Below, piece after piece: positions 2,644 to 25,702 of a stretch of DNA of 64,000 nt (positions are counted from its first letter, which is position 1; each line of letters opens with the position of its first letter). The position numbers were made by a program, and so were the translations under genes. The notes beneath the pieces are model-generated. The model was not told the origin of the DNA and did not search any database. It saw nothing but the letters and a program-made list of their open reading frames with translations. The stretch lies in the IMG/VR virus record IMGVR_UViG_3300032770_000002, positions 166,254-230,253 of that record, one strand, 5' to 3'.

Positions 2644-3679
2644 GAATTTCGTGAATGAGAAGATTTTTTTCATTGTTCGCACATTGGTGGCAGCAGTCTC
2701 TGACCGGGTCTAAGCCGTCAAACCTTGCCTTGGCCTCGTCGCTGAACCACAGCTCGCTAAACTTTCGGTCCTTGATTGACCCGATTGCGCCAGTCTCATC
2801 ATAGGCCTTGTTGTGGCAAGCATAGACGTTTAAGTCCGCGCCAACGACCGGGACAATCTGCATGAAATAGCACCGGTGATAGGTTCGAAAGCTGTTGTGG
2901 GCCGATGACATCAAGTCATAGGTCGTGTTGACCGAGAACGTCTTGTCAACGATCTTGTCGCGAATCTGGTCGAGTTGAACCTGCACCCGTGCAGCGATCT
3001 TGCGGTGATACTCGTGGAAGCCGGGTGAAAGCCACATCGGGCTGAAGCGCACGTTCTGAACGCCGCAGTCCTTAAGCTGCTGTGAGAATTGGAATAGCTT
3101 GGAGCAGTTGTCGGCGTGGACGATGAAGTTGACGTAGAGGTCGCAGGTCTTTGACTTTCTTTTTGCAAAGGCCGCAATGTTGACCATGATCTCGTCGAAC
3201 ATCGACTCATGGACGTGGCGGAACTTTGCCAGCTCCTCCTTGCACGAGTAGTCCATTGACACGCGAACCCACTTGGCGTTGGCGAGAGTCTCTGCCCGCT
3301 CGTCACTCAGAAAGGACCCGTTGGTGATGATGGAGAGGTCGATGTTCCGCTCAAGCGTGTATCGCATCATCGGCACGATGTCTGGGTGGATGAGCGGCTC
3401 ACCGCCACCAGAGAACGTCAAGGCCTTGACCCCAATGTCGGAAAAGTCGTCGAGAAGCTCAATCATCTTCTCGAGCTTGATGCGGTCACGCACGGCCATC
3501 TCCTTGTGCATCTGGGACATCTCTGGCGCGTGATAGACACACCACCAACAGTGATGGTTGCAGAGATTGATTGGCTTGACCCGGACGTAAATAGGCGCAC
3601 TGATGGTGCCTTTTCTGAACGACTTGAGCTTGTCCGGGAAGTGAACTATCTTCAGGTCTGAATACTTGTTGCTCGGCAC
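2615..3679 (-). CDS. radical SAM protein with SPASM/twitch-like C-terminal domain
   Basis: CNHHCWWC (CxxxCxxC), SGGGEPL, ITNG, WVRVSMD; C-terminal CYF...VYACH...CCHQC. Confidence 0.9.
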   Translation of the reverse strand: MPSNKYSDLKIVHFPDKLKSFRKGTISAPIYVRVKPINLCNHHCWWCVYHAPEMSQMHKEMAVRDRIKLEKMIELLDDFSDIGVKALTFSGGGEPLIHPDIVPMMRYTLERNIDLSIITNGSFLSDERAETLANAKWVRVSMDYSCKEELAKFRHVHESMFDEIMVNIAAFAKRKSKTCDLYVNFIVHADNCSKLFQFSQQLKDCGVQNVRFSPMWLSPGFHEYHRKIAARVQVQLDQIRDKIVDKTFSVNTTYDLMSSAHNSFRTYHRCYFMQIVPVVGADLNVYACHNKAYDETGAIGSIKDRKFSELWFSDEAKARFDGLDPVRDCCHQCANNEKNLLIHEILNTSTDNFV

Positions 3680-10668: not shown

Positions 10669-11171
10669 ACGCCCGCAATCTTATCGACCGGTTGGTTGAA
10701 ACGTCTGACTTGACGTTTGTCCCGATGGACGCTGACGAGATCCGGCAGGTTCAGTCTATTGCCGCTGGACAGCTGGCCAACGTGGACAATCTTTACTTCA
10801 TTAACCAGGACATTACTGATTATCACAGCCTTAACATCGACATCCCGCAGGAGTATTTGCGCAAGAAGGTTGGACACGGCCTTGAATCGGGTGACGTTCA
10901 CGGCGAGTTTTACGGATTCGGTCGAATGGCCTTCACACCTTCATCTCTTTTACGGTCTGAAATTGGAAGAGTTCCAGTTGTCTCTGGCTTGCACGTCATG
11001 GTGTTAAAGAGCAGCCAAGGGTGGGTTATTGGAACCACTCGCGGAGGGTCATACGGTGGCATAACTTTTTACAAGGACCACCCGATGCATGACCTCAACG
11101 CGGCCATCCAGAAGTTCATTGCCACGCTGGAAGTCATTGCAAATGGACAAAATTCCCGGTTTGACAGCTGA
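10665..11171 (+). CDS. hypothetical protein (N-terminus NARNLIDRLVE)
   Basis: TTG 10665 overlaps the upstream TGA; N-terminal motif shared with other putative head proteins. Confidence 0.6.
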   Translation: MNARNLIDRLVETSDLTFVPMDADEIRQVQSIAAGQLANVDNLYFINQDITDYHSLNIDIPQEYLRKKVGHGLESGDVHGEFYGFGRMAFTPSSLLRSEIGRVPVVSGLHVMVLKSSQGWVIGTTRGGSYGGITFYKDHPMHDLNAAIQKFIATLEVIANGQNSRFDS

Positions 11172-12126
11172 CGAACATGTCTAGCCGCTTGGCGTAGGGC
11201 GTCAGTCTATGGAAGTCGACCCACTCCAGAAAGTTGTCCAGGTCATTCTGGTCCAAGTTGGTCAGCCCGAGATAGTCAAGGAACGTGAACATCAGCCCGT
11301 CTGGGCGCGCAAGCTGAAGGCTGCGCATAAATTCACCCGTTGAAAATTCAAAGACGCGGCGCACGCGCTTCGTCACGGTTGTGATTTCGGGCTTTACGCC
11401 CAATGACGCCCACGTCAGCTCCTTTCCAGCACACGGCCCAGACGGCCCGCCAGTCCGTATCGGATATGTCCTAAAGACGCCATAGTAGCTCCAGTCAAGT
11501 CCACCAAGCCCATTGCGCTCAACTGCAACCCTCGGCAGCGTTGAGCGTGACGTGACGTGTGGAAAGAGCCCAAAATTCGTGTCGAGCAACAGGCCTTGTG
11601 AGCACTCAAAGATGGCCAAGTTGGAACTGATGTGCGAGATCAGGTTGAAGTAGGCCTCGTTGTCAACGACGACGATGTCCTGGTTGAGTGAGAAGAAGTC
11701 ATGTTCAATGACTGACTCAACACGGCGGTGGATAAACTTCCCTGCCCGGGCCATCCCTGTCCCTGACCCAGTTGACGAAATTCGCCTTACCAGGTCGGAT
11801 TCGTCGGCCTTCATCTCAGGCATTAAGACGGCCGCGTGCTCGTGGATGTAAATCGGCTTTTTGACGGCGCGCCAGTCTCGTTGAAGAAGTTCGAGTTCGA
11901 TGACTGAGTCTGGGCCCATCAAGATCGAGTCGGCCCAAAAGCTTGAAGCCGGGATGGAGCGCGTTGACCCTTGGGTGCTCGTGTGTCCGGAGTTCGGGCC
12001 GTTTTCACCAATGACGGTCAAGTGGAGTCCCGGGTATTCAGCCCTCAGTTTCTTGGCCAAAAATTCAGCCGCTGAGGCTTTTCCTTCACTGCCATATTGC
12101 CCGCCAAAGACAACGACGTGACGCAT
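11134..12126 (-). CDS. purZ: adenylosuccinate synthetase homologue, PurZ/PurZ0-like
   Basis: GGQYGSEGK (Ser where PurA has the catalytic Asp), PNSGHT, STGSGTG, ECSQGLLLD..FPHVTSRS, RTYPIRTGGPSGP, TTVTKRVRRV, TFLDY; 330 aa. Confidence 0.75.
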   Translation of the reverse strand: MRHVVVFGGQYGSEGKASAAEFLAKKLRAEYPGLHLTVIGENGPNSGHTSTQGSTRSIPASSFWADSILMGPDSVIELELLQRDWRAVKKPIYIHEHAAVLMPEMKADESDLVRRISSTGSGTGMARAGKFIHRRVESVIEHDFFSLNQDIVVVDNEAYFNLISHISSNLAIFECSQGLLLDTNFGLFPHVTSRSTLPRVAVERNGLGGLDWSYYGVFRTYPIRTGGPSGPCAGKELTWASLGVKPEITTVTKRVRRVFEFSTGEFMRSLQLARPDGLMFTFLDYLGLTNLDQNDLDNFLEWVDFHRLTPYAKRLDMFVSCQTGNFVHLQ

Positions 12127-12150: not shown

Positions 12151-12663
12151 ATGCATCGTTCCATCAAGATTATCTCCGGTGGTCAGACGGGGGCCGATCG
12201 TGCTGGTTTAATTTTTGCTCGCGACAACAACATCCCGTATGGAGGCTATGTGCCTTTGCGTCGAAAGGCCGAAGACGGGGTGGTGCCGATGATCTTCACC
12301 GAGATGACTGAGTCGGCATCGTCAGATTATCGTGTCAGGACTGAGTTAAACGTGAGAGAGGCCGACTGCACGATCGTCTTTACACGCTGCCCGCTCAGTG
12401 AAGTGGCCAGCGGGTCATGGCTGACGATTGCCTTCGCAAAGAAGTATGGGAAGGAGTGGCGGCACGTTGACGTCAACAAGCCGAACATGAACGAGGTTGA
12501 CAAGTGGCTTGAGATGCTTTACGCCAGGTGGCATCACTACGGAAGCGGGCTTCAATTCACGATCAACGTCGCTGGTGGGCGCGAGTCAAAGAACCGCGGC
12601 ATTCAAGACGCGGTCCTGGCGCTGTTAAAATCATCCACATTTTTGTTTACAAATCAAGGTTAG
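12151..12663 (+). CDS. SLOG-superfamily protein (putative molybdenum-carrier / YpsA-like)
   Basis: KIISGGQTGADRAGL, YRVRTELNVREADCTIVF, INVAGGRES. Confidence 0.8.
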   Translation: MHRSIKIISGGQTGADRAGLIFARDNNIPYGGYVPLRRKAEDGVVPMIFTEMTESASSDYRVRTELNVREADCTIVFTRCPLSEVASGSWLTIAFAKKYGKEWRHVDVNKPNMNEVDKWLEMLYARWHHYGSGLQFTINVAGGRESKNRGIQDAVLALLKSSTFLFTNQG

Positions 12664-12674
12664 TGTGGTATATT
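12646..12674 (+). promoter_or_regulatory. class 1 promoter, leaderless
   Basis: TTTACA-N17-TATATT, then ATG 6 nt later (12681). Confidence 0.85.
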
Positions 12675-12680
12675 AACGGC

Positions 12681-13769
12681 ATGATACGGATTGACAACGC
12701 GCCTGTTCCAAACGTGGTCTCGGACCGCAAACTGGGCCTTGAGATCGAGATTGATCTCGGCAACAATGGGGACCTCAGCGACCTTCCAGACATTCAAGGC
12801 TGGATCAAAAAGGGTGACGGCTCGCTCACGCACGGCTACGAATACACGTTCAACGGACCGTGCACACCGTCAACATCGAAGGAACGGTGTGAACGATTCT
12901 GTCAGTCGATTAAAGATGTGAACGTTCACCGCTCTGGCGGCTTTCACGTTCATGTCCAGGGCAACAACTATTCACACGAGGACGCATACAACCTTTGCTT
13001 GATTTACACGAAATTCCAGGACGTCATCAACAAGCTTGTGGCGCCTTCTCGAGTCAGCAACACCTACTGCGAAGCCTATTCGTGGACGTCACTCCGACAT
13101 CACACTCCGGCGTCATTCGCCCAGGCCTACAATTTGACGCCGCTTGTCAGCAGTCGTGGCTCCGCGAAAAACGTGGCCAACCGCTATCGGGCAGTCAACA
13201 CGAACATGCTAGCTTGCCGTGACGAGGCCGACCGCAGCATTGAATTTCGACAGGGCAGTGTCAGCAAGCGATTTGGCGTGGTCTACGGGTGGCCTTGCTT
13301 CCTTGCGGCATTGACTGAGTTGGCCCAGTGCAAAGACCTCTTCGACGAAGTCCTTAGTGCGCGGTCCATTCAACTTCGCGACCTCTTGGCCGTGCTTCAC
13401 GCCTGGGAGTCCAAGTCCGGTTCAACGGGCGTCGCCGACTGGGTGGAGTGGCGATACAATTACCTGAATCAGAAGCCTGACGACGCTGAACTTCGCCTCG
13501 CCTTGGAAGCCATCGCTGAGAAGCCAATCGGTCTTTATGGCCTGTCTCGCAAGATCGACATCAACCTGGCCGTGACAAAGCGGATCATTGATGACCTCTT
13601 GGCCAAGGGCCTCATCTTCAAGCGGGCCAACTCGACAGCTTATGTCACGTCCTATGAGTTTAAGGCTGAGGCCGACCTGAAGCAGATGATTGAGGCTTTG
13701 AAGAGCCGAGCGGCCAGTCTTACACCGCCTCCGCCAATGCCGGCCACCCTGCCTCCGCCACAAACATGA
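12681..13769 (+). CDS. putative amidoligase (COOH-NH2 ligase) 1
   Basis: LGLEIEI, DGSL..GYE, SGGFHVHV, NTYC, RYRAVN, SIEFRQ; possible C-terminal HTH and Pro-rich tail. Confidence 0.8.
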   Translation: MIRIDNAPVPNVVSDRKLGLEIEIDLGNNGDLSDLPDIQGWIKKGDGSLTHGYEYTFNGPCTPSTSKERCERFCQSIKDVNVHRSGGFHVHVQGNNYSHEDAYNLCLIYTKFQDVINKLVAPSRVSNTYCEAYSWTSLRHHTPASFAQAYNLTPLVSSRGSAKNVANRYRAVNTNMLACRDEADRSIEFRQGSVSKRFGVVYGWPCFLAALTELAQCKDLFDEVLSARSIQLRDLLAVLHAWESKSGSTGVADWVEWRYNYLNQKPDDAELRLALEAIAEKPIGLYGLSRKIDINLAVTKRIIDDLLAKGLIFKRANSTAYVTSYEFKAEADLKQMIEALKSRAASLTPPPPMPATLPPPQT

Positions 13770-13975
13770 CGACGCTTACCCACGAACAATTCGAAGAATA
13801 CATCAAGGACCCGCTGGCCGCTGACGCTAAAGTGCGCAAGTGGTGTGACCTGCCGGAGGATCGCTACTACACTGTCTCGGTCTGGCCAATGCCGGGGATC
13901 GTTCGGCCCACCAATGTCCACCGGCCGTTGCCGCCAAAAAGATCTCCAAGTCCAATCAGAGTTGAAAATTATTAA
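13766..13975 (+). CDS. hypothetical protein
   Basis: 69-aa ORF coupled by ATGA. Confidence 0.5.
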   Translation: MTTLTHEQFEEYIKDPLAADAKVRKWCDLPEDRYYTVSVWPMPGIVRPTNVHRPLPPKRSPSPIRVENY

Positions 13976-13978
13976 GCC

Positions 13979-14239
13979 ATGCCTGATTTCATCAAGCCTA
14001 ACATCGTCGGTCGGCACTGGGCCACGCACAGCTTTAAGCACGAGAGCACGCAAATTTACCTCTGCGAGAGCTACGATCCAGCTACGGGCTACAACATGAC
14101 GAACGTCAGCGACCCGACTGACAAACACTGCATTTCAGAGCGGGCCCCAAATCGAACTTGGTGGCCGGCTGAAGACCGCGGCGAACACTGGTGGATTGAA
14201 CAGTGGTGCCGTAAAATCCCAAAGCGTAGAATCCTATGA
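13979..14239 (+). CDS. hypothetical protein
   Basis: 86-aa ORF in a co-directional run. Confidence 0.5.
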   Translation: MPDFIKPNIVGRHWATHSFKHESTQIYLCESYDPATGYNMTNVSDPTDKHCISERAPNRTWWPAEDRGEHWWIEQWCRKIPKRRIL

Positions 14240-14769
14240 TGATTATCGTTGACGTTGAGTCTGACGGGCCCTGTCCTGTTGACTATTCAATGGTGTGTTT
14301 CGGTGCCGTCGTGGTTGAAGACACCAGTCGCACATTTTTCGGTCGAACGGCCCCGTTGCCTGGCGCAAAGTGGGACCCACAGGCCCTAGCAGTTAGTGGT
14401 CACACGCGCGAAGAGCACCTAACTTTTATGCATCCTGAAACCACGATGCTCGGGTTTGAAATGTGGCTGACTAGCTTGGGCAAGACCAAGTATCAGTTTA
14501 TCTCGGATAACCCGGCCTTTGATTGGCAGTGGATCAATTACTACTTCCACCACTTTGTCGGGCATAACCCATTCGGCTTTTCAGCAAGACGCATTGGCGA
14601 TTTCTATGCCGGGCTTGTCAAGAATTGGCGGTGCGCCAATGACTGGAAGAGCCTGCGTGTAACTGAGCACACGCACCACCCGGTCGATGACGCAAAAGGA
14701 AACGCTGAAGCGTTAATGGCGATGGCCCACAAGTATTCAGCGAAGCTGCTTAAGGTGGAGTCCACGTGA
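14236..14769 (+). CDS. DEDDh 3'-5' exonuclease (RNase AS-like)
   Basis: VDVESDGP, NPAFDW, THHPVDDA. Confidence 0.82.
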   Translation: MMIIVDVESDGPCPVDYSMVCFGAVVVEDTSRTFFGRTAPLPGAKWDPQALAVSGHTREEHLTFMHPETTMLGFEMWLTSLGKTKYQFISDNPAFDWQWINYYFHHFVGHNPFGFSARRIGDFYAGLVKNWRCANDWKSLRVTEHTHHPVDDAKGNAEALMAMAHKYSAKLLKVEST

Positions 14770-15631
14770 TGGTTCCAGCAACGGGGATTCCAGCCCTGTT
14801 GTCAATGACCGGGTTCTCGTCGATGTCACGCAAGTCTACGGTCGACGTCATCAACTGCTCCAACGTGTCAGGCGCGACGACCGCGTTCAAGTTCGTGGTC
14901 ACTTGCCACAAGGCCGGCAGGACGAGGTCTTGCATGTCGACCTGGTAGCCTTCAACCCGGACTGAGAACGTCGTCTGGTATCGAATCTGCTGGCTTCCAC
15001 GGTCATCCTCAGTGGCGTCGGACACGTCGGACTCAAGGCACAGCCTGATCAGCATCACATTTTCCTCAGTCGGATACTTCGCCCTGATCCACGTCTGGGG
15101 TTGCGCCCCGTTTCGCCAGAAGCATGCCCAGACGCGCTGCATGAATAGGGCCTGAGTGTCGGGACGCAGGCACCAATACGTGACGTCCAGGTGAAAGTTC
15201 AAGCCAATCGGCCTGTTTCTGACGCGGACGTTCCCGAGGTCCTGTTTTACGACGTCATTGGAAACGGTGGGCCAGCTGATGTGGCGGGCCCGGTGGGTTG
15301 AAAATGTCCCATAGTTTCGATACGATTGGCGCCGCCGCGTGATGGAGATGAGCGGGTATCGCGCTGGCGATGGATACGGCTCGTAGAGCGGGGAGCCATT
15401 TTTGTTCTTGGCCTTGAGCAGGTAAAGGTAAGGATTGTCAGGATTGGACCACTGCTGCTTAAAGTCCGCAAAGGCGTCCATCGGCTTTGCGAAGACGACC
15501 GGGACTGGATACCCGTCAGCAACAAAGAAGTGCGTGTGGCACCACCACTGCAGAGCCAGCTCGTGGATCCGCATTGGGGTCAAGTTAAAGTCAGGCGTGA
15601 CTCCAGGGCCGGTTATGATTGGCGCGTCCAT
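14750..15631 (-). CDS. tail completion / sheath terminator protein (T4 gp15-like)
   Basis: VPVVFA..., YPLISITR, PIGLNFHLDVTYW, IRYQTTFSVRVEGY resemble gp15-family proteins. Confidence 0.55.
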   Translation of the reverse strand: MDAPIITGPGVTPDFNLTPMRIHELALQWWCHTHFFVADGYPVPVVFAKPMDAFADFKQQWSNPDNPYLYLLKAKNKNGSPLYEPYPSPARYPLISITRRRQSYRNYGTFSTHRARHISWPTVSNDVVKQDLGNVRVRNRPIGLNFHLDVTYWCLRPDTQALFMQRVWACFWRNGAQPQTWIRAKYPTEENVMLIRLCLESDVSDATEDDRGSQQIRYQTTFSVRVEGYQVDMQDLVLPALWQVTTNLNAVVAPDTLEQLMTSTVDLRDIDENPVIDNRAGIPVAGTITWTPP

Positions 15632-15651
15632 CGTTTGCTACTTAAACTACC

Positions 15652-16002
15652 ATGACAGAATTGTTGACAGGCCGATCACGGCGAGGTTCAGAACCTTGGC
15701 TAGGTGTCGACCTTGACGCTACTTTGGCCACCCACAAAGAGGGCTCTGGCATTGATTCCATCGGTGAGCCAGTGCCTGGCATGCTTGAGAAGGTTAAGCG
15801 CGCATTGCGGGCCGGACGCAAGGTGAAGGTCTTCACCGCGCGAGCGGGTGACCCTAGGCAAATTCCGCTCATTCAGCAGTGGACAGTCAAACATGGGCTT
15901 GGAAAGCTCGAAGTGACCAACGAAAAAGACGAGAACTGTGAAGAGATTTGGGACGACCGTGCCAAGAGCGTGGTTCCTAACAAAGGACGCTTTGCCAACT
16001 AG
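15652..16002 (+). CDS. HAD-superfamily phosphatase-like protein
   Basis: GVDLDATLA (DxDxT), VFTAR, K...WDDRA. Confidence 0.7.
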   Translation: MTELLTGRSRRGSEPWLGVDLDATLATHKEGSGIDSIGEPVPGMLEKVKRALRAGRKVKVFTARAGDPRQIPLIQQWTVKHGLGKLEVTNEKDENCEEIWDDRAKSVVPNKGRFAN

Positions 16003-16006
16003 ATTT

Positions 16007-17143
16007 ATGAGTGAAGAGAACCAACAGGTGCCGGAATTTGACGTTCTAACTCCAGACATTCCACTGCCGCAAGTCGTGGCGAGGCAGGAAATTGCGGATG
16101 AACGGAAGGGAGCGTTTCGATTCAGCTTTATCGGGTCTGGCCAGGGTGGCGGGAGAATTGCGGCGACATTCCGCGCCCTGGGCTACAAGCGCGTTTGCGC
16201 GATCAACACGGCGCGTCAGGACCTGGCGTCGCTCCCAGCCGACGTTAAGAAACTCGTTATCGGCGATGGAGAAGGAGGTGCTGGCAAAGACCCAGCCGTG
16301 GCGAAGGCAGCGTTTGATAAAAACGCTGAAAATGTCCTAGACCTGATGCGGGCGTCATTTGGCCAAGTGTATGACCGAACAATCATCTGTGTTGGGGCCG
16401 GCGGTGGAACTGGCGCTGGAACGGTGATCGGCCTTGTCGACAAAGCGCGTGAGCTTCAGGTTGCCAGCAAGTGTCCGACTGACAAGGTCGGCGTCATCGT
16501 TGCCCTGCCCAAGGTGACCGAAGGCCGGCGTCCAAGCATCAACGCTCACACCGTCTTGTTATCATTGGTCGCCTACGTTGAACAGGGCTTTGTCTCACCG
16601 CTTATCGTTCTTGACAACGAGCGAATGAGCTCACTCTATCCTGGGCTCGCGATCGATCCATTCTGGGACACGGCCAATCAAAGCGTCTGTCGGCTGTTTG
16701 ACCTCTTCAACATGATCTGCGTTCAAAATTCGACATACACCGCGTTCGACCCGGCTGATTACAAGTCGATCCTCGACTCAGGCCTGATCGTCTTTGGGGC
16801 CACGCCCGTCGCCAACTGGTCGGAGGCCGGCCAAATCAGCTCCGCACTGCGAGACAACTTGAAGAAAAACATTCTTGCAGGAGGTGTCAACCTGTCAACT
16901 GGAACGGTCGCCGCGGCAATCGTTATTGCTGGAAAGAGCGTCTTAAGCCAAGTGCCGCACGAGCACCTCGACCAGGCCTTCGATCAATTGACAAGGTTGT
17001 TGAAAACAAACAGCATGGTGCACCGTGGCATCTACAGCGGAAACAAGGACTCCATGGCCATTTACACCGCAATTGGCGGCCTGGCCGCACCGACTGAGAA
17101 GCTGGACGAGCTGGCCAAAATCGGCGGGATAAGCGGTAAATAA
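16007..17143 (+). CDS. tubulin/FtsZ-family GTPase (PhuZ/TubZ/CetZ-like)
   Basis: IGSGQGGGRIA, AINTA, GAGKDP, GAGGGTGAG signature, LDNE, FDPADY (T7 loop); start ATG 16007. Confidence 0.9.
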   Translation: MSEENQQVPEFDVLTPDIPLPQVVARQEIADERKGAFRFSFIGSGQGGGRIAATFRALGYKRVCAINTARQDLASLPADVKKLVIGDGEGGAGKDPAVAKAAFDKNAENVLDLMRASFGQVYDRTIICVGAGGGTGAGTVIGLVDKARELQVASKCPTDKVGVIVALPKVTEGRRPSINAHTVLLSLVAYVEQGFVSPLIVLDNERMSSLYPGLAIDPFWDTANQSVCRLFDLFNMICVQNSTYTAFDPADYKSILDSGLIVFGATPVANWSEAGQISSALRDNLKKNILAGGVNLSTGTVAAAIVIAGKSVLSQVPHEHLDQAFDQLTRLLKTNSMVHRGIYSGNKDSMAIYTAIGGLAAPTEKLDELAKIGGISGK

Positions 17144-17206
17144 TTTGTTAACAACTTAAAGTTGCAAGTTCTATCTGATGTCGTCGTAAACGTCGTAGGA
17201 CGTTTT

Positions 17207-17237
17207 GGCGGGCCGGTTTTGGCGGCCCGCCTTCTTC
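17207..17237 (+). terminator. intrinsic terminator between convergent genes
   Basis: 9-bp stem GGCGGGCCG / CGGCCCGCC followed by ttctt. Confidence 0.7.
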
Positions 17238-17239
17238 AT

Positions 17240-17440
17240 TTAGAGGCCAAGTTCGTCAGGCGTTCCCTCGATTAGCCCATCAGACCTGGTCGAGGCTTTT
17301 GGCTCCAAATTTTCAACGTCTCCATGCGTTTTCGTGTGGTCTTCGTAGCATGCAGCACAGACGTTGTCGTCACAGTGCTCACACCGGCCAATCGTCATTC
17401 TCCCGCACTCACAGCAGGGTTGTTCAAGAGCGTCTGCCAT
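17240..17440 (-). CDS. small zinc-finger protein
   Basis: CCECG..CEHC..CAAC..H. Confidence 0.55.
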   Translation of the reverse strand: MADALEQPCCECGRMTIGRCEHCDDNVCAACYEDHTKTHGDVENLEPKASTRSDGLIEGTPDELGL

Positions 17441-17455
17441 ATCAAAAATAATCTA

Positions 17456-18298
17456 CTAGTCCCTAATTGCCCGGTCGAGGACTTCTGAATAGTGGTCAAT
17501 TTGGTTGTGCTTAAACCGCCTGACCCAGGCCGGGTGGCTGACTCGCCGAATCGGTGTCAACCCTAATTTTCTCAAGCCTTCGTGGGCTACGTTGCCCATG
17601 GCGATGATCTTCAACGTTGGTTTCCAGACCATCAAAGCCTGAATCAGGTTGGCTTCAGTCGGGTGAATGATGTTTGTCCACATTAGGTCCGATTCAAGCA
17701 CGTTGCTTTTTTCAAGGGCCAAGCTAATGTAACTGGCGGCGTCCCGGTCGTCGAAAAATGGCCAATGTTCGAAGTCCAAATATCGGTTGATTTCTTCACC
17801 TACTAAGACGGCCCGCGCTCGAATGTGCCCGCTCAGATTTTTGAGCCTAGGGTCAAGGGCTTCCGGAAACTGTGAATGGCGAAGCGCCGTCATTCGTTCG
17901 ATGGCGACGCGCGGCGTGTGCGAACCTGTCCACACGATGACGTCCGGGCGTGGAGCTTGGAGTGTCTCACACTTGAGCAAGGCCTTTTGGAGCGTGCTAG
18001 ACGTGATGATGTTGACAGCTCCAAATCGAAGCATGACTCTGTCGATGGCGCGAGCGGCTGCGAGAAAATTCTCTGATGAATCGGCAAGTTCTTTAACCCA
18101 GTTTGTGCAAACAATGACGAGATGATCACACGAAAGATCAATCGATTTTCTGACGATTTCGGTCAAGTAGATAAAGCGTCTTGACGATGACGACTTATCC
18201 ACGCGAATCACACTTGACTTAACCGTCGGTCCGACCACTTTTTGAATCAAGTCAACCATTTCGTGGCTAAAGTCATCTATGCAGATCAGTCCACGCAT
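17456..18298 (-). CDS. hypothetical protein with C-terminal uracil-DNA-glycosylase-like domain
   Basis: VLVGEE..WPFF..WTN..IIAMGNVA..SHPAWVRR resembles UDG-superfamily motifs. Confidence 0.5.
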   Translation of the reverse strand: MRGLICIDDFSHEMVDLIQKVVGPTVKSSVIRVDKSSSSRRFIYLTEIVRKSIDLSCDHLVIVCTNWVKELADSSENFLAAARAIDRVMLRFGAVNIITSSTLQKALLKCETLQAPRPDVIVWTGSHTPRVAIERMTALRHSQFPEALDPRLKNLSGHIRARAVLVGEEINRYLDFEHWPFFDDRDAASYISLALEKSNVLESDLMWTNIIHPTEANLIQALMVWKPTLKIIAMGNVAHEGLRKLGLTPIRRVSHPAWVRRFKHNQIDHYSEVLDRAIRD

Positions 18299-18321
18299 GC
18301 TAGGGTAGAACGAATTTCACT

Positions 18322-21135
18322 ATGAATGAGCCAATGCCAACACTGAATGAGCGCGTTGAGATCTTAGATGACCTACCAAAACCGATAATTGACGACGCTT
18401 CTGCTGCACCTGAACCAGCTCGCCTGACGCGAGTCTTTTCAAAGTCAGGAATTTGCCCATTTGACGACGTCACGTGGATCAAGCGAGACGTCGACATCAC
18501 CGATGACAAGGGTAAGGTCGTCTTCACGCAGAAGGGCGTCGAGACTCCAGAATTTTGGTCCGACCTGGCTGTCAAGATCGTCGCTTCGAAGTATTTTTGG
18601 GGCGAAAAGAACACCGACCAGCGTGAACACTCCGTGCGCCAGTTGATTCATCGCGTGTGTGACACCATTGCGACGTGGGCCGTTGAAGGACGATACGTTC
18701 ACCCTGACGACGAGACGCTCTTCTACAACGAACTTTGCTGGCTTTGCCTGCATCAACACGCGTCTTTTAATTCGCCCGTTTGGTTTAACGTTGGGCTGTT
18801 CCACCAATATGAAGCCGGGCGCGGCAGTGAAGGCGGGTGGGCTTGGGACCAAGACCTCGGCGAAGCTGTGAGGGTCAGGACGATGTATGAGAAGCCACAG
18901 TGCTCGGCTTGCTTCATCGTGTCCGTCGCTGACAACATGGAGGCACTCCTTGACTTGGCCAAGACTGAGGCGATGCTCTTCAAGTTTGGAAGCGGAACTG
19001 GGACGGACCTGACGCCCATTCGTTCATTTCGTGAGAAACTCTCCGGCGGTGGGTCGCCGTCAGGCCCGATGAGTTTTTTGCGCGTCTACGACCAGGTTGC
19101 TGGCATCGTCAAGTCAGGCGGCCGAACTCGTCGTGCGGCGAAGATGAACACCATCCGTGACTGGCACCCTGACATCGAGGAGTTCATTAACGCGAAGCCA
19201 GTTGAGGAACGAAAAGCGCGGGCCCTAATCGAGTCAGGCTATGATGGCTCCATTAACGGTGACGCCTACTCGAGCGTGATGTATCAGAATGAGAACCTTT
19301 CTGTTCGAGTCAGCGACCAGTTCATGAAGGCAGCCACGAATGGCGATGGAACGTGGTGGACAAAAGCGGTCACGAGTGGAGACCGGGTTGAGAAGAAAGA
19401 CGCCAAGGACTTGCTGCACAAGATGGCCGAAGCAGCTTGGTTCTGTGGTGACCCAGGCGTGCAGTTTGACGGCGTCATCCAGCGTTACCACACGTGTGCT
19501 GGAACGGAGCCGATTCACAGCACAAACCCATGTGCTGAATATGTCTTCATCAACAACACGTCGTGCAACCTCGCCTCAATTAACCTCGTCAAGTTCATGG
19601 AAGGCGAGGTGTTCAACGTCGAGCGGTTCAAAGCCGCGGTGCGGCTCATCTTTACGGCCCAAGAGATCTTGTTTGACAACTCGAGCTATCCAACCAAGAC
19701 GATTGCCGAGAACTCGCACATCTTCAGGACTGTAGGGCTTGGCTTTGCGAACCTTGGCTCGCTGTTGATGGGCCTTGGCATTCCATATAACTCTGACCAA
19801 GGCCGTAGCATTGCCGCTTCGATTACGGCCATCATGACGGGTGAAGCTTACGCCACGTCGGCTGGAATGGCCAAGACGCTGGGACCGTTTCCGGGGTTCT
19901 ATGACGCGCGCTGTTCGCACGTCAAGCACCCGGTCAAGGCGAACAATGTTGAGTCGATGCGCGACGTCTTAAACCTCCACGCCGCACACGCGAGCAAGCT
20001 CAAGACTCCAGGGCACCGCTATCTCGATGCCGCCGCAAACGAGTGTTGGCTGCGGGCGATTGGACTGTTCAACTGCCACGGTGTGCGCAACGCCCAGGCA
20101 ACGGTCATTGCGCCAACTGGAACGATCGCATTCATGATGGACTGCGACACGACCGGGATAGAGCCAGAGCTTAGCTTGGTCAAGGTTAAGTCGCTCATCG
20201 GTGGCGGGTCCTTGACGATCGTCAATCGCTCCATCGGTCGGGTGCTTCGCCAGCTCGGCTACAGTGAGCCTGAAATTGATGCCGCGATCAAACACGTGGA
20301 GAAATATGGCCACCTTGAGGCCATCAGCGAGGACATCAAGTCGCCGCTCAGGATTGACGACCACCACGACGTCTTTGACACGTCACTGCCGGCCGGGCCG
20401 AGCAAGCGCTCCATCCCATACATGGCCCACGTCCAGATGATGGCTGCAGTTCAGCCGTTCATCTCTGGGGCGATTTCAAAGACGATCAACATGCCAGAAA
20501 GCTCCACGGTCGAAGACGTGAAGCAGGCTTACGTGGAAGCGTGGAAGTCTGGTCTGAAGTGTGTGGCCATCTACCGTGATGGCTCTAAACGAGCCCAGCC
20601 ATTAAACGTCAAAAAGTTTGGTCAAGACAAAGCAGCGGACCCGGCGTTAAATGGCCACGGTGTTTATCTCCCAAATCGACACCGGCTCCCTGACACCCGG
20701 AAGGCCGTGACGCACAAGTTCAGCGTTGGTGGCCATGAGGGTTACCTGACTGTCGGCCTCTTTGAAAACGACATGCCAGGTGAGCTGTTCATCACGATGG
20801 CCAAGGAGGGTTCGACGGTAGGCGGCCTGATGGACACGATTGGCACGCTGACAAGTTTGGCGCTGCAGTATGGCGTGCCACTCGAAGCTTTAATCCGCAA
20901 GTTTCGGTCAACTCACTTCGAGCCATCTGGCATTACGACAAATCCAAAAATCCGGATGTCGGCCTCGATCATCGACTACATATTCCACTGGATGGCCCTT
21001 GAATTTGACCACGATGACGAAGTTTCCAGCGTCAGTGACGAGGTAAAGACGTGCCCACATTGCGGCCACGTGGCGCAGCGTAGTGGGACGTGTTACACTT
21101 GCACGAATTGCGGAAGCAGTCTCGGTTGCAGTTGA
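18322..21135 (+). CDS. nrdJ: class II (B12-dependent) ribonucleotide reductase
   Basis: FNSPVWFN, QCSACF, GGRTRRAAKM, TNPCAE, CNLASINL, IAPTGTI, ISGAISKTIN; TSCPD domain and C-terminal Zn ribbon. Confidence 0.95.
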   Translation: MNEPMPTLNERVEILDDLPKPIIDDASAAPEPARLTRVFSKSGICPFDDVTWIKRDVDITDDKGKVVFTQKGVETPEFWSDLAVKIVASKYFWGEKNTDQREHSVRQLIHRVCDTIATWAVEGRYVHPDDETLFYNELCWLCLHQHASFNSPVWFNVGLFHQYEAGRGSEGGWAWDQDLGEAVRVRTMYEKPQCSACFIVSVADNMEALLDLAKTEAMLFKFGSGTGTDLTPIRSFREKLSGGGSPSGPMSFLRVYDQVAGIVKSGGRTRRAAKMNTIRDWHPDIEEFINAKPVEERKARALIESGYDGSINGDAYSSVMYQNENLSVRVSDQFMKAATNGDGTWWTKAVTSGDRVEKKDAKDLLHKMAEAAWFCGDPGVQFDGVIQRYHTCAGTEPIHSTNPCAEYVFINNTSCNLASINLVKFMEGEVFNVERFKAAVRLIFTAQEILFDNSSYPTKTIAENSHIFRTVGLGFANLGSLLMGLGIPYNSDQGRSIAASITAIMTGEAYATSAGMAKTLGPFPGFYDARCSHVKHPVKANNVESMRDVLNLHAAHASKLKTPGHRYLDAAANECWLRAIGLFNCHGVRNAQATVIAPTGTIAFMMDCDTTGIEPELSLVKVKSLIGGGSLTIVNRSIGRVLRQLGYSEPEIDAAIKHVEKYGHLEAISEDIKSPLRIDDHHDVFDTSLPAGPSKRSIPYMAHVQMMAAVQPFISGAISKTINMPESSTVEDVKQAYVEAWKSGLKCVAIYRDGSKRAQPLNVKKFGQDKAADPALNGHGVYLPNRHRLPDTRKAVTHKFSVGGHEGYLTVGLFENDMPGELFITMAKEGSTVGGLMDTIGTLTSLALQYGVPLEALIRKFRSTHFEPSGITTNPKIRMSASIIDYIFHWMALEFDHDDEVSSVSDEVKTCPHCGHVAQRSGTCYTCTNCGSSLGCS

Positions 21136-23092: not shown

Positions 23093-23281
23093 ATGAGTGA
23101 TGCACTTCGAGACAAAAATGGACGTGCCATCGGTTACGTGACCGAGGACAGCAGCCGCAAAACGGTCCGTGACGTCAACGGCCGGCCTCAAGGCAGCTAC
23201 GACTCACGAGACAACGCAACTCGCGATAAAAATGGGCGCGTGACCGGATACGGTGACCAGACATTCGGCTTTCTTCGATAA
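23093..23281 (+). CDS. small protein with three RDxNGR repeats
   Basis: LRDKNGRAIG / VRDVNGRPQG / TRDKNGRVTG. Confidence 0.7.
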   Translation: MSDALRDKNGRAIGYVTEDSSRKTVRDVNGRPQGSYDSRDNATRDKNGRVTGYGDQTFGFLR

Positions 23282-24531
23282 TGAACTTGACGACATCAGT
23301 TGGGTTTGAACTCGAGTTTAGCGGGTCAAATCTTGACCGTGTTGAACGCGAGCTTCGCTCTAAGGGGATCGACTGTCACAATTACGGCCGGTGGCGCCAC
23401 TCTGACGGCGACCTGTGGGACCTTAAGACCGACTCGTCATGTGGGTTTGAAGCCGTCAGCCCGATATTGCAGACCTATGAGGAGCTGGTTGATGCTGCTG
23501 GTGTCGGCGCCTTGATCGCCAATGTCGGTGGAACTGCGACAGAGAGGTGCGGGCTTCACGTTCACATCGGCGGCGGTGACTTCAGTTCGCTTCAACTTGA
23601 AAACGTCTTTCGATTTTTCACACGGTATGAGTTCGCCTTTTTTCTCATGGTGCCTCCGGCTAGGCGGACAAACATCTACTGCAAGCGGCTTTCACCAGCT
23701 ACGATCAACTCAATCAAGCGGGCGTCATTTCAGCGCAATGACTGGTGGATTCACACGTGGACTGACAAGAATGTCTGGCTGAATGGGCGCCGTTGGCCGG
23801 ACATCAGGACGCTTGAGTTTCGCATCATGCCCGGGTCACTCAGCCCATACTTCATCATTGGCTACGTGACGTTTCTTCAGTGCGTGATCAACACGGTCAA
23901 GGACCGAACGATTAACTGGGGCATGGCTCGCAGCAAGGATGACCGCTCGCTCTTCCAGACGATGCTTGGTCAGTCCGGATTTTATGGCCCATGGATTAGT
24001 GAAGACCTTAAGGAACTCTACCTCACCGGGCGCAAGTGGGCGATCGAGCGGTATAAGCTGGCGAACGAGTTAGTGTCGGGTTTCTTTGAAATGACGCGGG
24101 TCGTTCCTAAAATCCCGTCGGTCGACTGCCGGCCAAGTTGGGACCGTGGAGACACATCGCTCCCACAACGGACACGCCGTGTGAGGCGACGAGTGCCGGA
24201 AGTAGAGGTGCGAAGCCCCGCGTCATCTCCGCCTCCGCCATCGACGGCTTATTCACCGATTCAGCAGCCTCAGTTTATAAGCTCAACGCCTGTGGTGACG
24301 TCATTTGCTACTCAGACGACGCAGACGATGCCAGAAATTTCAATCAGCAACGCTACCACTACTTCCGGCGATTGGATTGTCTCATGGGGACAAGGAGGAA
24401 CGAGCCACTTGAACATGGGCCAAGCTTCTAGCTCAGCGGAAACAACTCCAACCGCAGAACGCAGTGAAACGACAGCAACTCCGCCGACGCCGTCGTCCGA
24501 ATCTACACCGTCTGAATCTCAGGGCTCGTAG
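23281..24531 (+). CDS. putative amidoligase 2
   Basis: VGFELEF, TDSSCGFEAVSP, CGLHVHIG, NIYC, TLEFR; long S/T/P-rich tail. Confidence 0.82.
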   Translation: MNLTTSVGFELEFSGSNLDRVERELRSKGIDCHNYGRWRHSDGDLWDLKTDSSCGFEAVSPILQTYEELVDAAGVGALIANVGGTATERCGLHVHIGGGDFSSLQLENVFRFFTRYEFAFFLMVPPARRTNIYCKRLSPATINSIKRASFQRNDWWIHTWTDKNVWLNGRRWPDIRTLEFRIMPGSLSPYFIIGYVTFLQCVINTVKDRTINWGMARSKDDRSLFQTMLGQSGFYGPWISEDLKELYLTGRKWAIERYKLANELVSGFFEMTRVVPKIPSVDCRPSWDRGDTSLPQRTRRVRRRVPEVEVRSPASSPPPPSTAYSPIQQPQFISSTPVVTSFATQTTQTMPEISISNATTTSGDWIVSWGQGGTSHLNMGQASSSAETTPTAERSETTATPPTPSSESTPSESQGS

Positions 24532-24541
24532 TTAGCCCAAG

Positions 24542-25702
24542 ATGAGACAGGCAAAAGCTACTATCGACCAGCTGTTTGAGCGCCAGATTGATGAGATCTG
24601 GCGCCCTCCAAATCTTCCCGATAAGGAGCCTGAAGACATCTTTCAAGACACCATGGACCGCGCTTACGCGGGCTATGAGCAAAAGGCTGGTCGACAGCAG
24701 GTTAATCGGGCATTCGACAACCGTGAAAAGCAGTCCGGTCATCGTAATTTTCTAGACGCTTTGGCGGAACCCGAACAACTTGCAGTCGTCTTCGGGAACC
24801 TCAACTATCAAGTTGAAAATGGCGGATTCACACAGTGGATCGACAACAATTATTACGAAGACACGATCGACAGGCTGCGTGAATTTGGTGACCGATTCAA
24901 GGAACGATTTCCAGTTTTAGGCCGGGTGTTAGCGATCATCGATGAGTTGGAGGAGTATGCCTCGAATTTTGGCGAGGACATGACCCTGCCCAAGTTGACC
25001 GGCCGCGAGTGGGATGAGGACATCGGCAACGCCTTTTACGATGAGGATTGGGACAGGCTCAACGAGCTTACGGGCGGAACTGACATCGACAAGCGCAGGG
25101 TTGACGACGCCACGGAGGATGTGCTCAAGGACATGATCGAACTTTCGGTCGATGAGTCAGAGACCGAAGGCCAGTTTTACTGGGCGATTAAGCGGTCACG
25201 CCTGCATGGCCACGATGAGGAGATTGAGCGTTCGAGCATGACATATGCTGACGAGGACCAGGCTTACGAAGCGGGTGAAAAGAGAGCTGAGGAACTCCAA
25301 AAAGAAGCCATGGAGGAGCAGAATGAGCTCTACGACTTAGCCCGTGAGGAAGCAAAGAATGAACTGGAAAAGGAGCTGCGTGAGGGTCTTGACAAAGACG
25401 TTCATCGGACTTTTGAACGAGCCGACCACGACTATTACGCGATTCACACCGAGGTTCTTGACGCAATTTCTAGCATCCTTCGCACGGAATATAACGTCAA
25501 TTCGTCATTCAGTCAATTTTTCACTCAGGCCATGGGCAAGGTCCGTCAGTCACTTAAACGCGTGGCCGATGTAGCTCGACAAAAACTCTCGTCCGGACTT
25601 GGACGGGCAGCTGGAGCATTGACTCGAGCTTCACAGAAAGTTCGTCCGGGAGAATCTGCGGAAGAATCTGCGAAAGACTCGATCTGTCGACTCATCTCAT
25701 AG
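24542..25702 (+). CDS. acidic protein with DMP19/DUF4375-like motif
   Basis: LNYQVENGGFTQWIDNNY...ADHDYY; D/E-rich middle. Confidence 0.6.
   Translation: MRQAKATIDQLFERQIDEIWRPPNLPDKEPEDIFQDTMDRAYAGYEQKAGRQQVNRAFDNREKQSGHRNFLDALAEPEQLAVVFGNLNYQVENGGFTQWIDNNYYEDTIDRLREFGDRFKERFPVLGRVLAIIDELEEYASNFGEDMTLPKLTGREWDEDIGNAFYDEDWDRLNELTGGTDIDKRRVDDATEDVLKDMIELSVDESETEGQFYWAIKRSRLHGHDEEIERSSMTYADEDQAYEAGEKRAEELQKEAMEEQNELYDLAREEAKNELEKELREGLDKDVHRTFERADHDYYAIHTEVLDAISSILRTEYNVNSSFSQFFTQAMGKVRQSLKRVADVARQKLSSGLGRAAGALTRASQKVRPGESAEESAKDSICRLIS

What the first reader, a model, noticed from the sequence alone, without database searches (positions are those of the whole stretch)
16007..17143. Phage tubulin/FtsZ homologue in a genome with T4-like tail and helicase genes and PolA
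Seen: complete GTPase motifs, including GGGTGAG and the T7-loop DxxD. Established: PhuZ positions the phage nucleus in phiKZ-like phages, and TubZ partitions plasmid and prophage DNA. The neighbouring genes (gp15-like protein, family A polymerase, sigma70-like promoters) are not phiKZ-like. Inference: a cytoskeletal function in a different large-phage lineage, or interference with host division.
Basis: partly seen in the sequence, partly recalled or inferred. Interest (0 to 1): 0.6.

Follow-up and report, generated by a model that had tools for sequence, protein, structure and literature searches.

The report
TubZ-like tubulin in uncultured jumbo phage
The gene is a real, intact tubulin/FtsZ-type GTPase in a complete 230-kb wetland phage that has no phage-nucleus genes; it belongs to a large, uncharacterised phage family closest to plasmid TubZ, so it most likely builds a filament inside infected cells by a route not yet studied.

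Summary
Window 16007-17143 (+) encodes a 378-aa tubulin/FtsZ-superfamily GTPase with intact T1 (GSGQGGGR), T4 (GGGTGAG) and T7 (FDPAD) motifs. Its AF2 model is confident (pLDDT 91.7).

The window is part of a complete 230,253-bp myovirus-like phage genome from a wetland metagenome. The genome lacks chimallin and phiKZ-type multisubunit RNA polymerase, so it is not a nucleus-forming phage.

- **Not FtsZ or PhuZ:** both form 100/100 clades that exclude the protein, and identity to FtsZ is about 20%.
- **Closest to TubZ:** the profile-profile E-value is 6e-42 against Bacillales plasmid TubZ-like proteins, 4e-12 against FtsZ and 4e-7 against PhuZ. Structural Z is 36.7 for TubZ, 35.7 for CetZ, 30 for FtsZ and 22 for PhuZ.
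- **No TubZ partition set:** no TubR gene, no centromere repeats and no integrase were found.
- **Distribution:** the family has at least 857 protein clusters and 412 IMG/VR contigs. It has no match in 50,697 deposited phage genomes and only one gene fragment, on a 2.2-kb MAG contig, in 185,579 species genomes.
- **Mobility between phages:** it sits in unrelated phage backbones. In 53 of 84 related loci it lies directly after the portal gene.
- **Distinctive feature:** a near-invariant N-terminal peptide, FDxxxPDIP(L/M)P.

The most likely role is a GTP-driven filament used during lytic infection. The cargo is unknown.

The parts
16007..17143 (+). TubZ-like tubulin/FtsZ-superfamily GTPase gene (P0001, 378 aa, about 40 kDa)
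   Evidence: Pfam PF00091 above its cut-off. AF2 model pLDDT 91.7. Best structural matches are TubZ and CetZ, Z 36-37. Hundreds of homologues at 50-71% identity.
16037..16069 (+). Conserved N-terminal peptide FDVLTPDIPLP (residues 11-21), in a low-confidence extension ahead of the GTPase core
   Evidence: D12, I18, P19 and P21 are invariant in 42 sequences. The motif [DE][IV]P[LMVI]P occurs in 112 of the 115 members in which the T1 loop could be located (120 listed), 26-28 residues before T1. The model shows no secondary structure at 1-38, pLDDT 55-77.
16133..16156 (+). T1 nucleotide-binding loop GSGQGGGR (residues 43-50)
   Evidence: G43, G45, Q46, G48 and R50 are invariant. Coordinates.
16400..16420 (+). 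T4 tubulin signature GGGTGAG (residues 132-138)
   Evidence: G133, G134, G136 and G138 are invariant. Coordinates.
16745..16759 (+). T7 loop FDPAD (residues 247-251). By alignment to the FtsZ DFAD motif, these acidic residues would activate GTP hydrolysis in the neighbouring subunit.
   Evidence: F247, D248 and D251 are invariant. The stretch aligns to the FtsZ motif 'LDFADLK'.
17096..17128 (+). Short conserved C-terminal helix EKLDELAKIGG (residues 364-374). There is no long TubZ-type tail. This copy also lacks the LLAEKPGVGxVLGE tail of its closest relatives.
   Evidence: Model helix at 363-373. Family consensus EKLxELKRLGD. Tails compared.
15652..16002 (+). Upstream 116-aa gene ending 4 nt before the tubulin start. 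It is HAD/LNS2 phosphatase-like, not a TubR-type DNA-binding protein.
   Evidence: phrog_1238, E 1.9e-9. A weak LNS2 hit in the L014 orthologue. Atlas leads point to LNS2 and polynucleotide-kinase phosphatase clusters. A DxDxT motif is visible in the sequence. It holds the same position only in the closest relatives, L014 and L016.
17207..17231 (+). GC-rich hairpin followed by a T-run, between the tubulin gene and the convergent 66-aa gene. It probably ends the transcription unit.
   Evidence: 9-bp all-GC stem plus TTCTTCATTT.

Best explanation
The gene encodes a self-assembling, GTP-hydrolysing filament protein of the tubulin/FtsZ superfamily. It belongs to a distinct, uncharacterised phage subfamily whose nearest characterised relatives are the TubZ proteins of plasmid and prophage partition systems.

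Shown:
- Intact nucleotide-binding loops (T1, T4) and the T7 loop.
- The two-domain fold.
- Family membership.
- Absence of phage-nucleus genes from the genome.

Inferred: subunits stack head to tail so that the T7 aspartates of one subunit complete the GTPase site of the next. This would give a dynamic, TubZ-like (possibly treadmilling) filament.

The gene sits in lytic-cycle modules: replication and nucleotide metabolism here, and directly after the portal gene in most relatives. No TubR adaptor, centromere repeats or integrase were found. The filament is therefore most likely used during lytic infection to position or move a phage cargo, either replicating DNA or assembling and packaging capsids, without a chimallin nucleus.

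The near-invariant, flexible N-terminal peptide FDxxxPDIP(L/M)P is proposed as the handle that binds the cargo, an anchor, or the neighbouring subunit. That step is speculation.
For: Identity:
- PF00091 scores above its cut-off.
- The motifs are invariant in 42 members.
- The model has pLDDT 91.7.

Affinity to TubZ:
- Foldseek: TubZ-Bt E 3e-25, TMq 0.76 over about 380 columns; FtsZ TMq 0.63-0.67.
- Exhaustive structural alignment: B. cereus TubZ Z 36.7, CetZ2 35.7, TubZ-Bt 33.7, c-st TubZ 32.0, FtsZ 30.1, tubulins about 26, PhuZ 22.4.
- hhalign score 301, E 6e-42, over residues 37-363 against Bacillales plasmid TubZ-like proteins. The score is 92 against FtsZ and 57 against PhuZ.
- Best PDB profile hit is RepX/TubZ 4ei7, E 1.2e-19.
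- Family member P0056 passes the TubZ-like_C PF22453 cut-off.

Not a nucleus phage:
- No chimallin or phiKZ RNA polymerase subunits, with a positive control.
- Five related genomes also lack chimallin.

Lytic context:
- Neighbours here are an exonuclease, a phosphatase-like protein, a UDG-like protein, class II RNR and ThyA.
- A portal gene lies directly upstream in 53 of 84 related loci, often overlapping the tubulin start.
- No integrase in this genome or four relatives.

Selection: identity is 50-71% across phage backbones whose TerL and portal are not detectably related to anything in this genome.
Against: - No polymerisation, localisation or expression data exist. No RNA run holds the sequence.
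- The homodimer prediction gave no verdict.
- No cargo or adaptor is identified. The only conserved upstream partner here is an enzyme-like protein, and it is shared only with close kin, so synteny may simply reflect common descent.
- The gene's neighbourhood varies between lineages, so guilt by association is weak.
- The plasmid TubZ-like set used for hhalign was chosen as the best tblastn hits, which biases that comparison.
- CetZ scores almost as high as TubZ by structure, and no CetZ or archaeal FtsZ sequences could be put in the tree.
Confidence: 0.55

Rival explanations
1. It is the motor of a type III (TubZRC-like) partition system. The filament would segregate the phage genome as a low-copy plasmid prophage or during pseudolysogeny, as in Clostridium phage c-st and the Bacillus plasmids pBtoxis and pXO1.
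For: - The closest characterised relatives by sequence profile and by structure are TubZ/RepX.
- No integrase was found, so any lysogeny would have to be episomal.
- One related contig is classed as a provirus by IMG/VR.
- A small gene sits directly upstream, in the position tubR holds in five of the six plasmid loci fetched.
Against: - The upstream gene is HAD/phosphatase-like, not a winged-helix protein.
- No iteron or centromere-like repeats lie within 2.5 kb.
- The protein lacks the long C-terminal tail that binds TubR.
- Most relatives carry the gene in the TerL-portal late operon, an odd place for a maintenance gene.
- Only one short fragment of the family was found in 185,579 species genomes, so resident prophages or plasmids are not seen.
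- The family was not found in 72,556 plasmids other than distant Bacillales TubZ at 20-31% identity.
Confidence: 0.15
2. It interferes with host cell division or hijacks the host divisome. It would do so either by co-assembling with or capping host FtsZ, or by competing for FtsZ anchors through its N-terminal peptide. That peptide resembles the first half of the FtsZ C-terminal peptide: family FDVEVPDIPLP against FtsZ FDLDVPAFLRN and DYLDIPAFLRKQ.
For: - The N-terminal motif is present in 112 of 115 assessable members.
- It lies in a flexible extension.
- FtsZ tails seen here share F-D-x-[DE]-[VI]-P.
- Blocking division is a known phage strategy (general knowledge; not with tubulin homologues).
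Against: - Identity to FtsZ is only about 20% and the protein is excluded from the FtsZ clade, so co-polymerisation is unlikely.
- Both polymer interfaces (nucleotide face and T7) are conserved, as expected for a homopolymer rather than a cap.
- The motif lacks the F-L-R helical half, which from general knowledge of the FtsZ C-terminal peptide carries the main contacts with FtsA and ZipA.
- The resemblance covers only a few residues and may be chance.
- No test was possible.
Confidence: 0.12
3. It is a PhuZ-type spindle protein that positions a compartment built from a shell protein unrelated to chimallin.
For: It is a jumbo phage with a tubulin. Many large ORFs have no annotation: 702 aa and 746 aa in the window, and others in the genome.
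Against: - PhuZ is the most distant tubulin class by structure, Z 22.4, and by profile, hhalign score 57.
- There is no PF22334 domain and no acidic C-terminal tail.
- There is no multisubunit RNA polymerase, which accompanies nucleus-based replication (PMC7824862).
- The family also occurs in relatives whose largest recovered contigs are well under 200 kb (116-142 kb at 71-83% estimated completeness) and next to a siphovirus-like tail module.
Confidence: 0.08

Closest known systems
TubZ / RepX (type III plasmid and prophage partition GTPases: B. thuringiensis pBtoxis, B. cereus/anthracis pXO1, Clostridium phage c-st)
   Same: - Same two-domain fold with the best structural scores: Z 36.7, 33.7 and 32.0; TMq 0.76 over nearly the full length.
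- Best profile hits.
- TubZ-like_C domain at or near the Pfam cut-off.
- A T1 loop of the G-x-G-Q-x-G-G-R type, shared with the Alicyclobacillus TubZ-like proteins.
   Different: - Only 19-27% identity.
- No TubR gene, no centromere repeats, and no long C-terminal TubR-binding tail.
- It carries a family-specific conserved N-terminal peptide.
- It resides in lytic-looking phage modules rather than plasmid maintenance loci.
PhuZ (phiKZ-like nucleus-forming phages, Chimalliviridae)
   Same: A phage-encoded tubulin in a genome larger than 200 kb. It presumably also forms a cytomotive filament during infection.
   Different: - Most distant class by structure, Z 22.4, and by profile.
- BLAST between phiKZ PhuZ and this genome finds nothing.
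- The PhuZ PHROG scores only E 0.007.
- No PF22334 C-domain and no acidic tail.
- The genome lacks chimallin and phiKZ RNA polymerases.
FtsZ (bacterial and archaeal cell-division protein)
   Same: GTPase core and T7 logic. Profile match over residues 38-257, E about 1e-16 to 4e-12. IMG automatically names many family members 'cell division GTPase FtsZ'.
   Different: - About 20% identity.
- Excluded from a 100/100 FtsZ clade.
- No FtsZ_C Pfam hit and no C-terminal anchor peptide.
- Not in a cellular genome.
CetZ (archaeal cell-shape tubulin-like proteins)
   Same: Structural similarity is nearly as high as for TubZ: Z 35.7 and 32.0. The profile hit to 3zid has E 2.5e-17.
   Different: No CetZ_C Pfam hit. 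The source is viral, not archaeal. CetZ sequences could not be obtained for the tree, so the relationship is untested phylogenetically.

Membership tests
Tubulin/FtsZ superfamily | GTPase domain with T1 glycine loop, T4 GGGTG(S/A)G signature and T7 acidic loop | tested here: met
   PF00091 scores 38.1 bits against a cut-off of 33. Motif coordinates. Motifs are invariant in 42 sequences.
Tubulin/FtsZ superfamily | Two-domain fold: Rossmann-like N-domain, H7 helix, C-terminal domain | tested here: met
   Model pLDDT 91.7. Z 22-37 to every tubulin class, against about 11 for the next unrelated fold.
Tubulin/FtsZ superfamily | GTP-dependent head-to-tail polymerisation | not testable with these tools
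   The homodimer prediction gave no verdict. This needs biochemistry.
TubZ (type III partition) | TubZ-type C-terminal domain and overall closest similarity to TubZ | tested here: inconclusive
   - PF22453 scores 24.7 bits in P0001, just under the cut-off of 26, but 31.2 in family member P0056.
- Structure and profiles rank TubZ first, with CetZ close behind.
- The tree does not resolve the deep order.
TubZ (type III partition) | Adjacent tubR gene encoding a small DNA-binding adaptor | tested here: not met
   The upstream 116-aa gene is HAD/LNS2 phosphatase-like. Five of the six plasmid TubZ-like loci fetched show the small upstream gene; the Pontibacillus locus does not.
TubZ (type III partition) | Centromere (tubC) iterons next to the operon | tested here: not met
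   No repeat family beyond chance two-copy matches in 13500-18500. The only tandem repeat there is the terminator hairpin.
TubZ (type III partition) | Long flexible C-terminal tail that binds TubR | tested here: not met
   The protein ends 5 residues after a short helix at 363-373.
PhuZ | PhuZ-type C-terminal domain (PF22334) and PhuZ family profile | tested here: not met
   No PF22334 hit in P0001, while phiKZ PhuZ scores 1.7e-37. phrog_4733 scores only E 0.007.
PhuZ | Co-occurrence with chimallin and phiKZ-type multisubunit RNA polymerases | tested here: not met
   phrog_4795, PF25677, phrog_3015 and phrog_2987 find nothing in the complete genome. The chimallin profile finds all four PhuZ phages tested.
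FtsZ | Membership of the FtsZ clade, FtsZ_C domain and C-terminal anchor peptide | tested here: not met
   The FtsZ clade (100/100) excludes the family. No PF12327 hit. The C-terminus lacks the D-I-P-x-F-L-R peptide. Only two bacterial phyla of FtsZ were sampled.
CetZ | CetZ_C domain, archaeal origin | tested here: not met
   No PF21011 hit at E<=1. The record is viral. No phylogenetic placement was possible because no CetZ sequences were available.

The most novel reading that the evidence does not exclude
This is the type member of a third functional class of phage tubulin, beside PhuZ and TubZ. It would be an adaptor-free (or new-adaptor) TubZ-like filament, spread by gene exchange among unrelated tailed phages. 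In most of them it is wired into the terminase-portal operon. Its conserved N-terminal FDxxxPDIP(L/M)P peptide would couple the filament to procapsids or the packaging machinery, or to host FtsZ-anchor proteins, organising virion assembly in space without a phage nucleus.
Probability: 0.2. Interest if true: 0.8.

Novelty: new variant of a known kind. Interest (0 to 1): 0.55.

Why it matters
Phage tubulins are known from two settings. PhuZ centres and rotates the chimallin nucleus. TubZ partitions plasmid prophages.

This gene represents a very large family: at least 857 protein clusters at 90% identity and 412 IMG/VR contigs. None of its members was found in a cultured or deposited phage, and the papers found and read here, including jumbo-phage reviews up to 2026, do not discuss it. 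It fits neither setting: it has no nucleus genes and no TubR or centromere.

If it does build filaments during lytic growth, then cytoskeleton-based organisation of infection is much more widespread among tailed phages than the Chimalliviridae. It would also extend to phages whose recovered contigs are well under 200 kb. The frequent fusion of the gene into the terminase-portal operon gives a concrete, testable lead linking a bacterial-type cytoskeleton to capsid assembly or DNA packaging.

Tried and rejected
- **Homodimer prediction** with GTP and Mg: no verdict (score 0.00, controls not run). It counts neither for nor against self-assembly.
- **tblastn of P0001 against 50,697 deposited phages:** no match at E<=1e-3, and only a spurious helicase hit at E<=10. 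No cultured relative is available to anchor function. Records of this genome or very near ones may be masked.
- **BLAST of phiKZ genes** (PhuZ, chimallin and the neighbouring genes gp50-gp77, which include the non-virion RNA polymerase subunits) against the genome: nothing.
- **Search for a conserved partner gene** in 84 loci. No gene accompanies the tubulin in all lineages. HMMs of the commonest neighbours (portal, TerL, ERCC4 nuclease and others) find nothing in this genome.
- **Centromere-like repeats and promoters near the gene:** none beyond chance.
- **Expression:** only two DNA runs, both wetland metagenomes, hold the sequence and there are no RNA runs.
- **Deep phylogeny:** the order of TubZ-like, FtsZ, PhuZ and the new family is unresolved (supports 46/18 and 55/20). 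P0093, which has an internal duplication, is unstable. CetZ, archaeal FtsZ and eukaryotic tubulin sequences could not be obtained as references, so they are represented only by PDB profile and structure scores.
- **The large representative-protein search** was not run, on the operators' advice, because the word search and family scans had already placed the protein.
- **Z-genome check:** phiVC8 DatZ has no BLAST match in the genome.
- **T4 gp15 Pfam model:** finds nothing, but the search had no positive control.
Full report
**1. The observation**

The ORF at window 16007-17143 (+) translates cleanly to 378 aa. A longer GTG-initiated version starts at 15938 and overlaps the upstream gene. Homologues align from the ATG, so 16007 is the likely start. 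It lies 4 nt after the stop codon of the upstream gene, which suggests coupled translation.

Pfam places the protein in Tubulin PF00091 above the curated cut-off, 38.1 against 33 bits. There is a near-threshold TubZ-like_C hit (PF22453, 24.7 against 26 bits).

- T4 GGGTGAG at residues 132-138.
- T7 FDPAD at residues 247-251.
- T1 GSGQGGGR at residues 43-50.

All are invariant in a 42-sequence family alignment (A1). An AlphaFold2 model built on A1 has mean pLDDT 91.7 and pTM 0.89.

**2. The genome**

The window is bases 166254-230253 of a 230,253-bp IMG/VR virus record. The record has direct terminal repeats and is estimated 100% complete. The last 100 bases recur near the start, consistent with a terminal repeat of about 127 bp. 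GC content is 54%, and there are no tRNA genes.

Elsewhere the genome encodes:
- a major head protein, a prohead protease, an 887-aa tail sheath and a UvsX-like recombinase;
- a T4-like portal.

The window holds replication and nucleotide-metabolism genes:
- a family A polymerase, a DnaB-like helicase, two further helicases and an NAD-dependent ligase;
- a topoisomerase, class II ribonucleotide reductase and thymidylate synthase.

The nearest cultured relatives are very distant. The major head protein is about 30% identical to Bacillus phage SP-15 and HSE3. The polymerase is about 25% identical to Bacillus myoviruses. The only sequencing runs that hold the DNA are wetland metagenomes.

**3. 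Not a nucleus-forming phage**

Profiles for chimallin (phrog_4795, PF25677) find nothing in the complete genome at E<=1. Neither do profiles for two phiKZ non-virion RNA polymerase subunits (phrog_3015, phrog_2987).

- The RNA polymerase profiles ring in cellular control genomes.
- The chimallin profile rings strongly in phiKZ, Goslar, Aphrodite1 and RSL2, so the negative result is meaningful.
- BLAST with phiKZ gp39, gp54 and neighbouring genes (gp50-gp77, including the non-virion RNA polymerase subunits) also finds nothing.
- Five related large phage records lack chimallin too.

**4. Which tubulin**

Sequence and profile evidence:
- Single-sequence PDB hits are weak and mixed: FtsZ 2.8e-10, RepX 8e-9, TubZ 2e-5. 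PhuZ is absent from the list.
- With the family profile, the best PDB hit is RepX/TubZ 4ei7 (1.2e-19). It is followed by CetZ 3zid (2.5e-17), FtsZ (about 1e-16), c-st TubZ (5e-13) and TubZ-Bt, the last over the full length. PhuZ is not in the top 60.
- tblastn against plasmids finds only Bacillales TubZ/RepX-like genes at 20-31% identity. Five of the six fetched have the classical small upstream gene.
- Profile-profile comparison gives score 301, E 6e-42, over residues 37-363 against these plasmid proteins. The score is 92 (E 3.8e-12) against FtsZ and 57 (E 3.5e-7) against PhuZ. This plasmid set was chosen by similarity to the query, which biases the comparison.

Structural evidence:
- Foldseek ranks TubZ-Bt first (E 3e-25, TMq 0.76, about 380 columns). 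FtsZ gives TMq 0.63-0.67.
- An exhaustive alignment against 48,161 PDB representatives gives B. cereus TubZ Z 36.7, CetZ2 35.7, TubZ-Bt 33.7, c-st TubZ 32.0, CetZ 32.0 and FtsZ 30.1. Eukaryotic, Asgard and Btub tubulins score about 26, and PhuZ 22.4.

Phylogenetic evidence comes from a maximum-likelihood tree of 41 rows (LG+C20, ultrafast bootstrap / SH-aLRT):
- FtsZ and PhuZ each form 100/100 clades that exclude every family member.
- The deeper order is unresolved.
- One family member with an internal duplication (P0093) is unstable.

The protein is therefore neither a recently captured host FtsZ nor a PhuZ. It is a separate branch nearest to TubZ.

**5. The family**

The word-based search found 857 proteins at E<=0.001. 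Hundreds are 50-71% identical, all are metagenomic, and they lie on contigs up to about 250 kb. IMG/VR holds 412 contigs with a relative. The ESM Atlas holds several viral clusters with the same shape, TM 0.87-0.90. The nearest BFVD model is an 'FtsZ' from an uncultured Caudovirales phage at 29% identity.

By contrast:
- None of 50,697 deposited phage genomes has a match even at E<=10, while phiKZ PhuZ finds 194 records.
- A scan of one genome for each of 185,579 prokaryotic species, using family-specific peptide patterns, found a single gene fragment. It lies on a 2.2-kb contig of a Margulisbacteria MAG.
- The papers found and read mention only PhuZ, TubZ and a different FtsZ-like gene in phage G.

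**6. Context in relatives**

Only the closest relatives (L014 and L016, on contigs of 181 kb and 203 kb) share the upstream 116-aa gene. That gene is HAD/LNS2 phosphatase-like. The downstream 280-aa gene is a weak UDG-like lead.

In 53 of 84 loci a protein of about 657 aa lies directly upstream on the same strand, in 18 of them overlapping or within 9 nt of the tubulin start. It is preceded by a large terminase and an ERCC4 nuclease. The model of this protein is only moderate (pLDDT 61.8), but all of its Foldseek matches at E<=0.001 are phage portal proteins.

HMMs of these neighbours find nothing in the present genome. A Tara contig carries a 55%-identical tubulin right after lambda-like tail genes. 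The same tubulin therefore sits in unrelated phage backbones, which points to exchange between phages under strong purifying selection.

**7. Distinctive features**

A peptide F-D-x-x-x-P-[DE]-I-P-[LM]-P lies 26-28 residues before the T1 loop in 112 of the 115 members in which T1 could be located. In the model it sits in an extension without secondary structure, pLDDT 55-77.

It recalls the first half of the FtsZ C-terminal anchor peptide: FDLDVPAFLRN and DYLDIPAFLRKQ in FtsZs fetched here. It lacks the F-L-R half, so I treat the resemblance as a lead only.

The C-terminus is a short helix (EKLxELKRLGD). This copy lacks the LLAEKPGVGxVLGE tail of its nearest relatives.

**8. Mechanism**

- **Shown:** a conserved, intact tubulin-type GTPase with both polymer interfaces preserved; TubZ-like in fold; encoded in a phage with no nucleus genes.
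- **Inferred:** GTP-dependent head-to-tail assembly into a dynamic filament.
- **Favoured role:** positioning of phage DNA or of capsid assembly and packaging during lytic growth. The surrounding genes here and in relatives belong to replication or head-morphogenesis modules. No TubR gene, centromere repeats or integrase were found.
- **Rivals:** TubZRC-like episome partition, interference with the host divisome, or a spindle for a non-chimallin compartment. These are less supported but not excluded.
- **Untested:** the homodimer prediction gave no verdict, and no RNA data exist.

**9. Verdict**

This is a real feature. The gene is a member of a large, uncharacterised, TubZ-like tubulin family of uncultured phages, found here in a jumbo phage that does not form a nucleus. 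It is a new variant of a known kind, of moderate to good interest.

Noticed in passing
window 11134-12126 (-): A 330-aa PurZ-like adenylosuccinate-synthetase homologue. It hits phrog_1211 at E 1.6e-41 and Pfam Adenylsucc_synt at 8e-18. It is 31-34% identical to the PurZ genes of phiVC8, Burkholderia Bm1 and others. This hints at a 2-aminoadenine (Z) genome in a jumbo phage. However, phiVC8 DatZ has no BLAST match in the genome, and the polymerase is only faintly like DpoZ.
   Followed up: partly
window 12528-13769 (+), 23281-24531 (+), 58683-59645 (+), 2615-3679 (-): Two amidoligase-like genes, a class II glutamine amidotransferase-like gene and a radical SAM/SPASM gene are scattered among the replication genes. 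Together they may form a DNA or nucleotide hypermodification set.
   Followed up: no
L071:5929-7902 and 52 other related loci (cluster 1): In most related phages the tubulin gene directly follows, and often overlaps, a portal gene of about 657 aa that has no Pfam or PHROG match. The portal is itself preceded by TerL and an ERCC4 nuclease.
   Followed up: partly
L015:11178-21170 (-): A Tara Oceans contig has a giant ORF of at least 3948 aa next to its tubulin gene. The tubulin there follows lambda-like tail genes (gpM, gpL, gpK and gpJ types).
   Followed up: no
L013:1-1423 and L014:14368-15680: Two large relatives carry Ro60/TROVE plus vWA genes within about 10 kb of the tubulin gene.
   Followed up: no
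window 24542-25702 (+): A 386-aa protein with a DMP19-like domain (PF14300, E 1.8e-6). DMP19 proteins are DNA mimics, so it may have an anti-defence or regulatory role.
   Followed up: no
whole genome G000 (230,253 bp): No tRNA gene was found in the entire jumbo genome. Many large ORFs have no PHROG match (702, 746, 1131 aa; the 702- and 746-aa window ORFs also have no Pfam match), and a 1789-aa ORF was not scanned at all.
   Followed up: no
IMG/VR record behind L047 (G018, 142 kb): IMG/VR classes this tubulin-bearing relative as a provirus, yet no tyrosine integrase was found in it. Its ends were not inspected for host genes.
   Followed up: no
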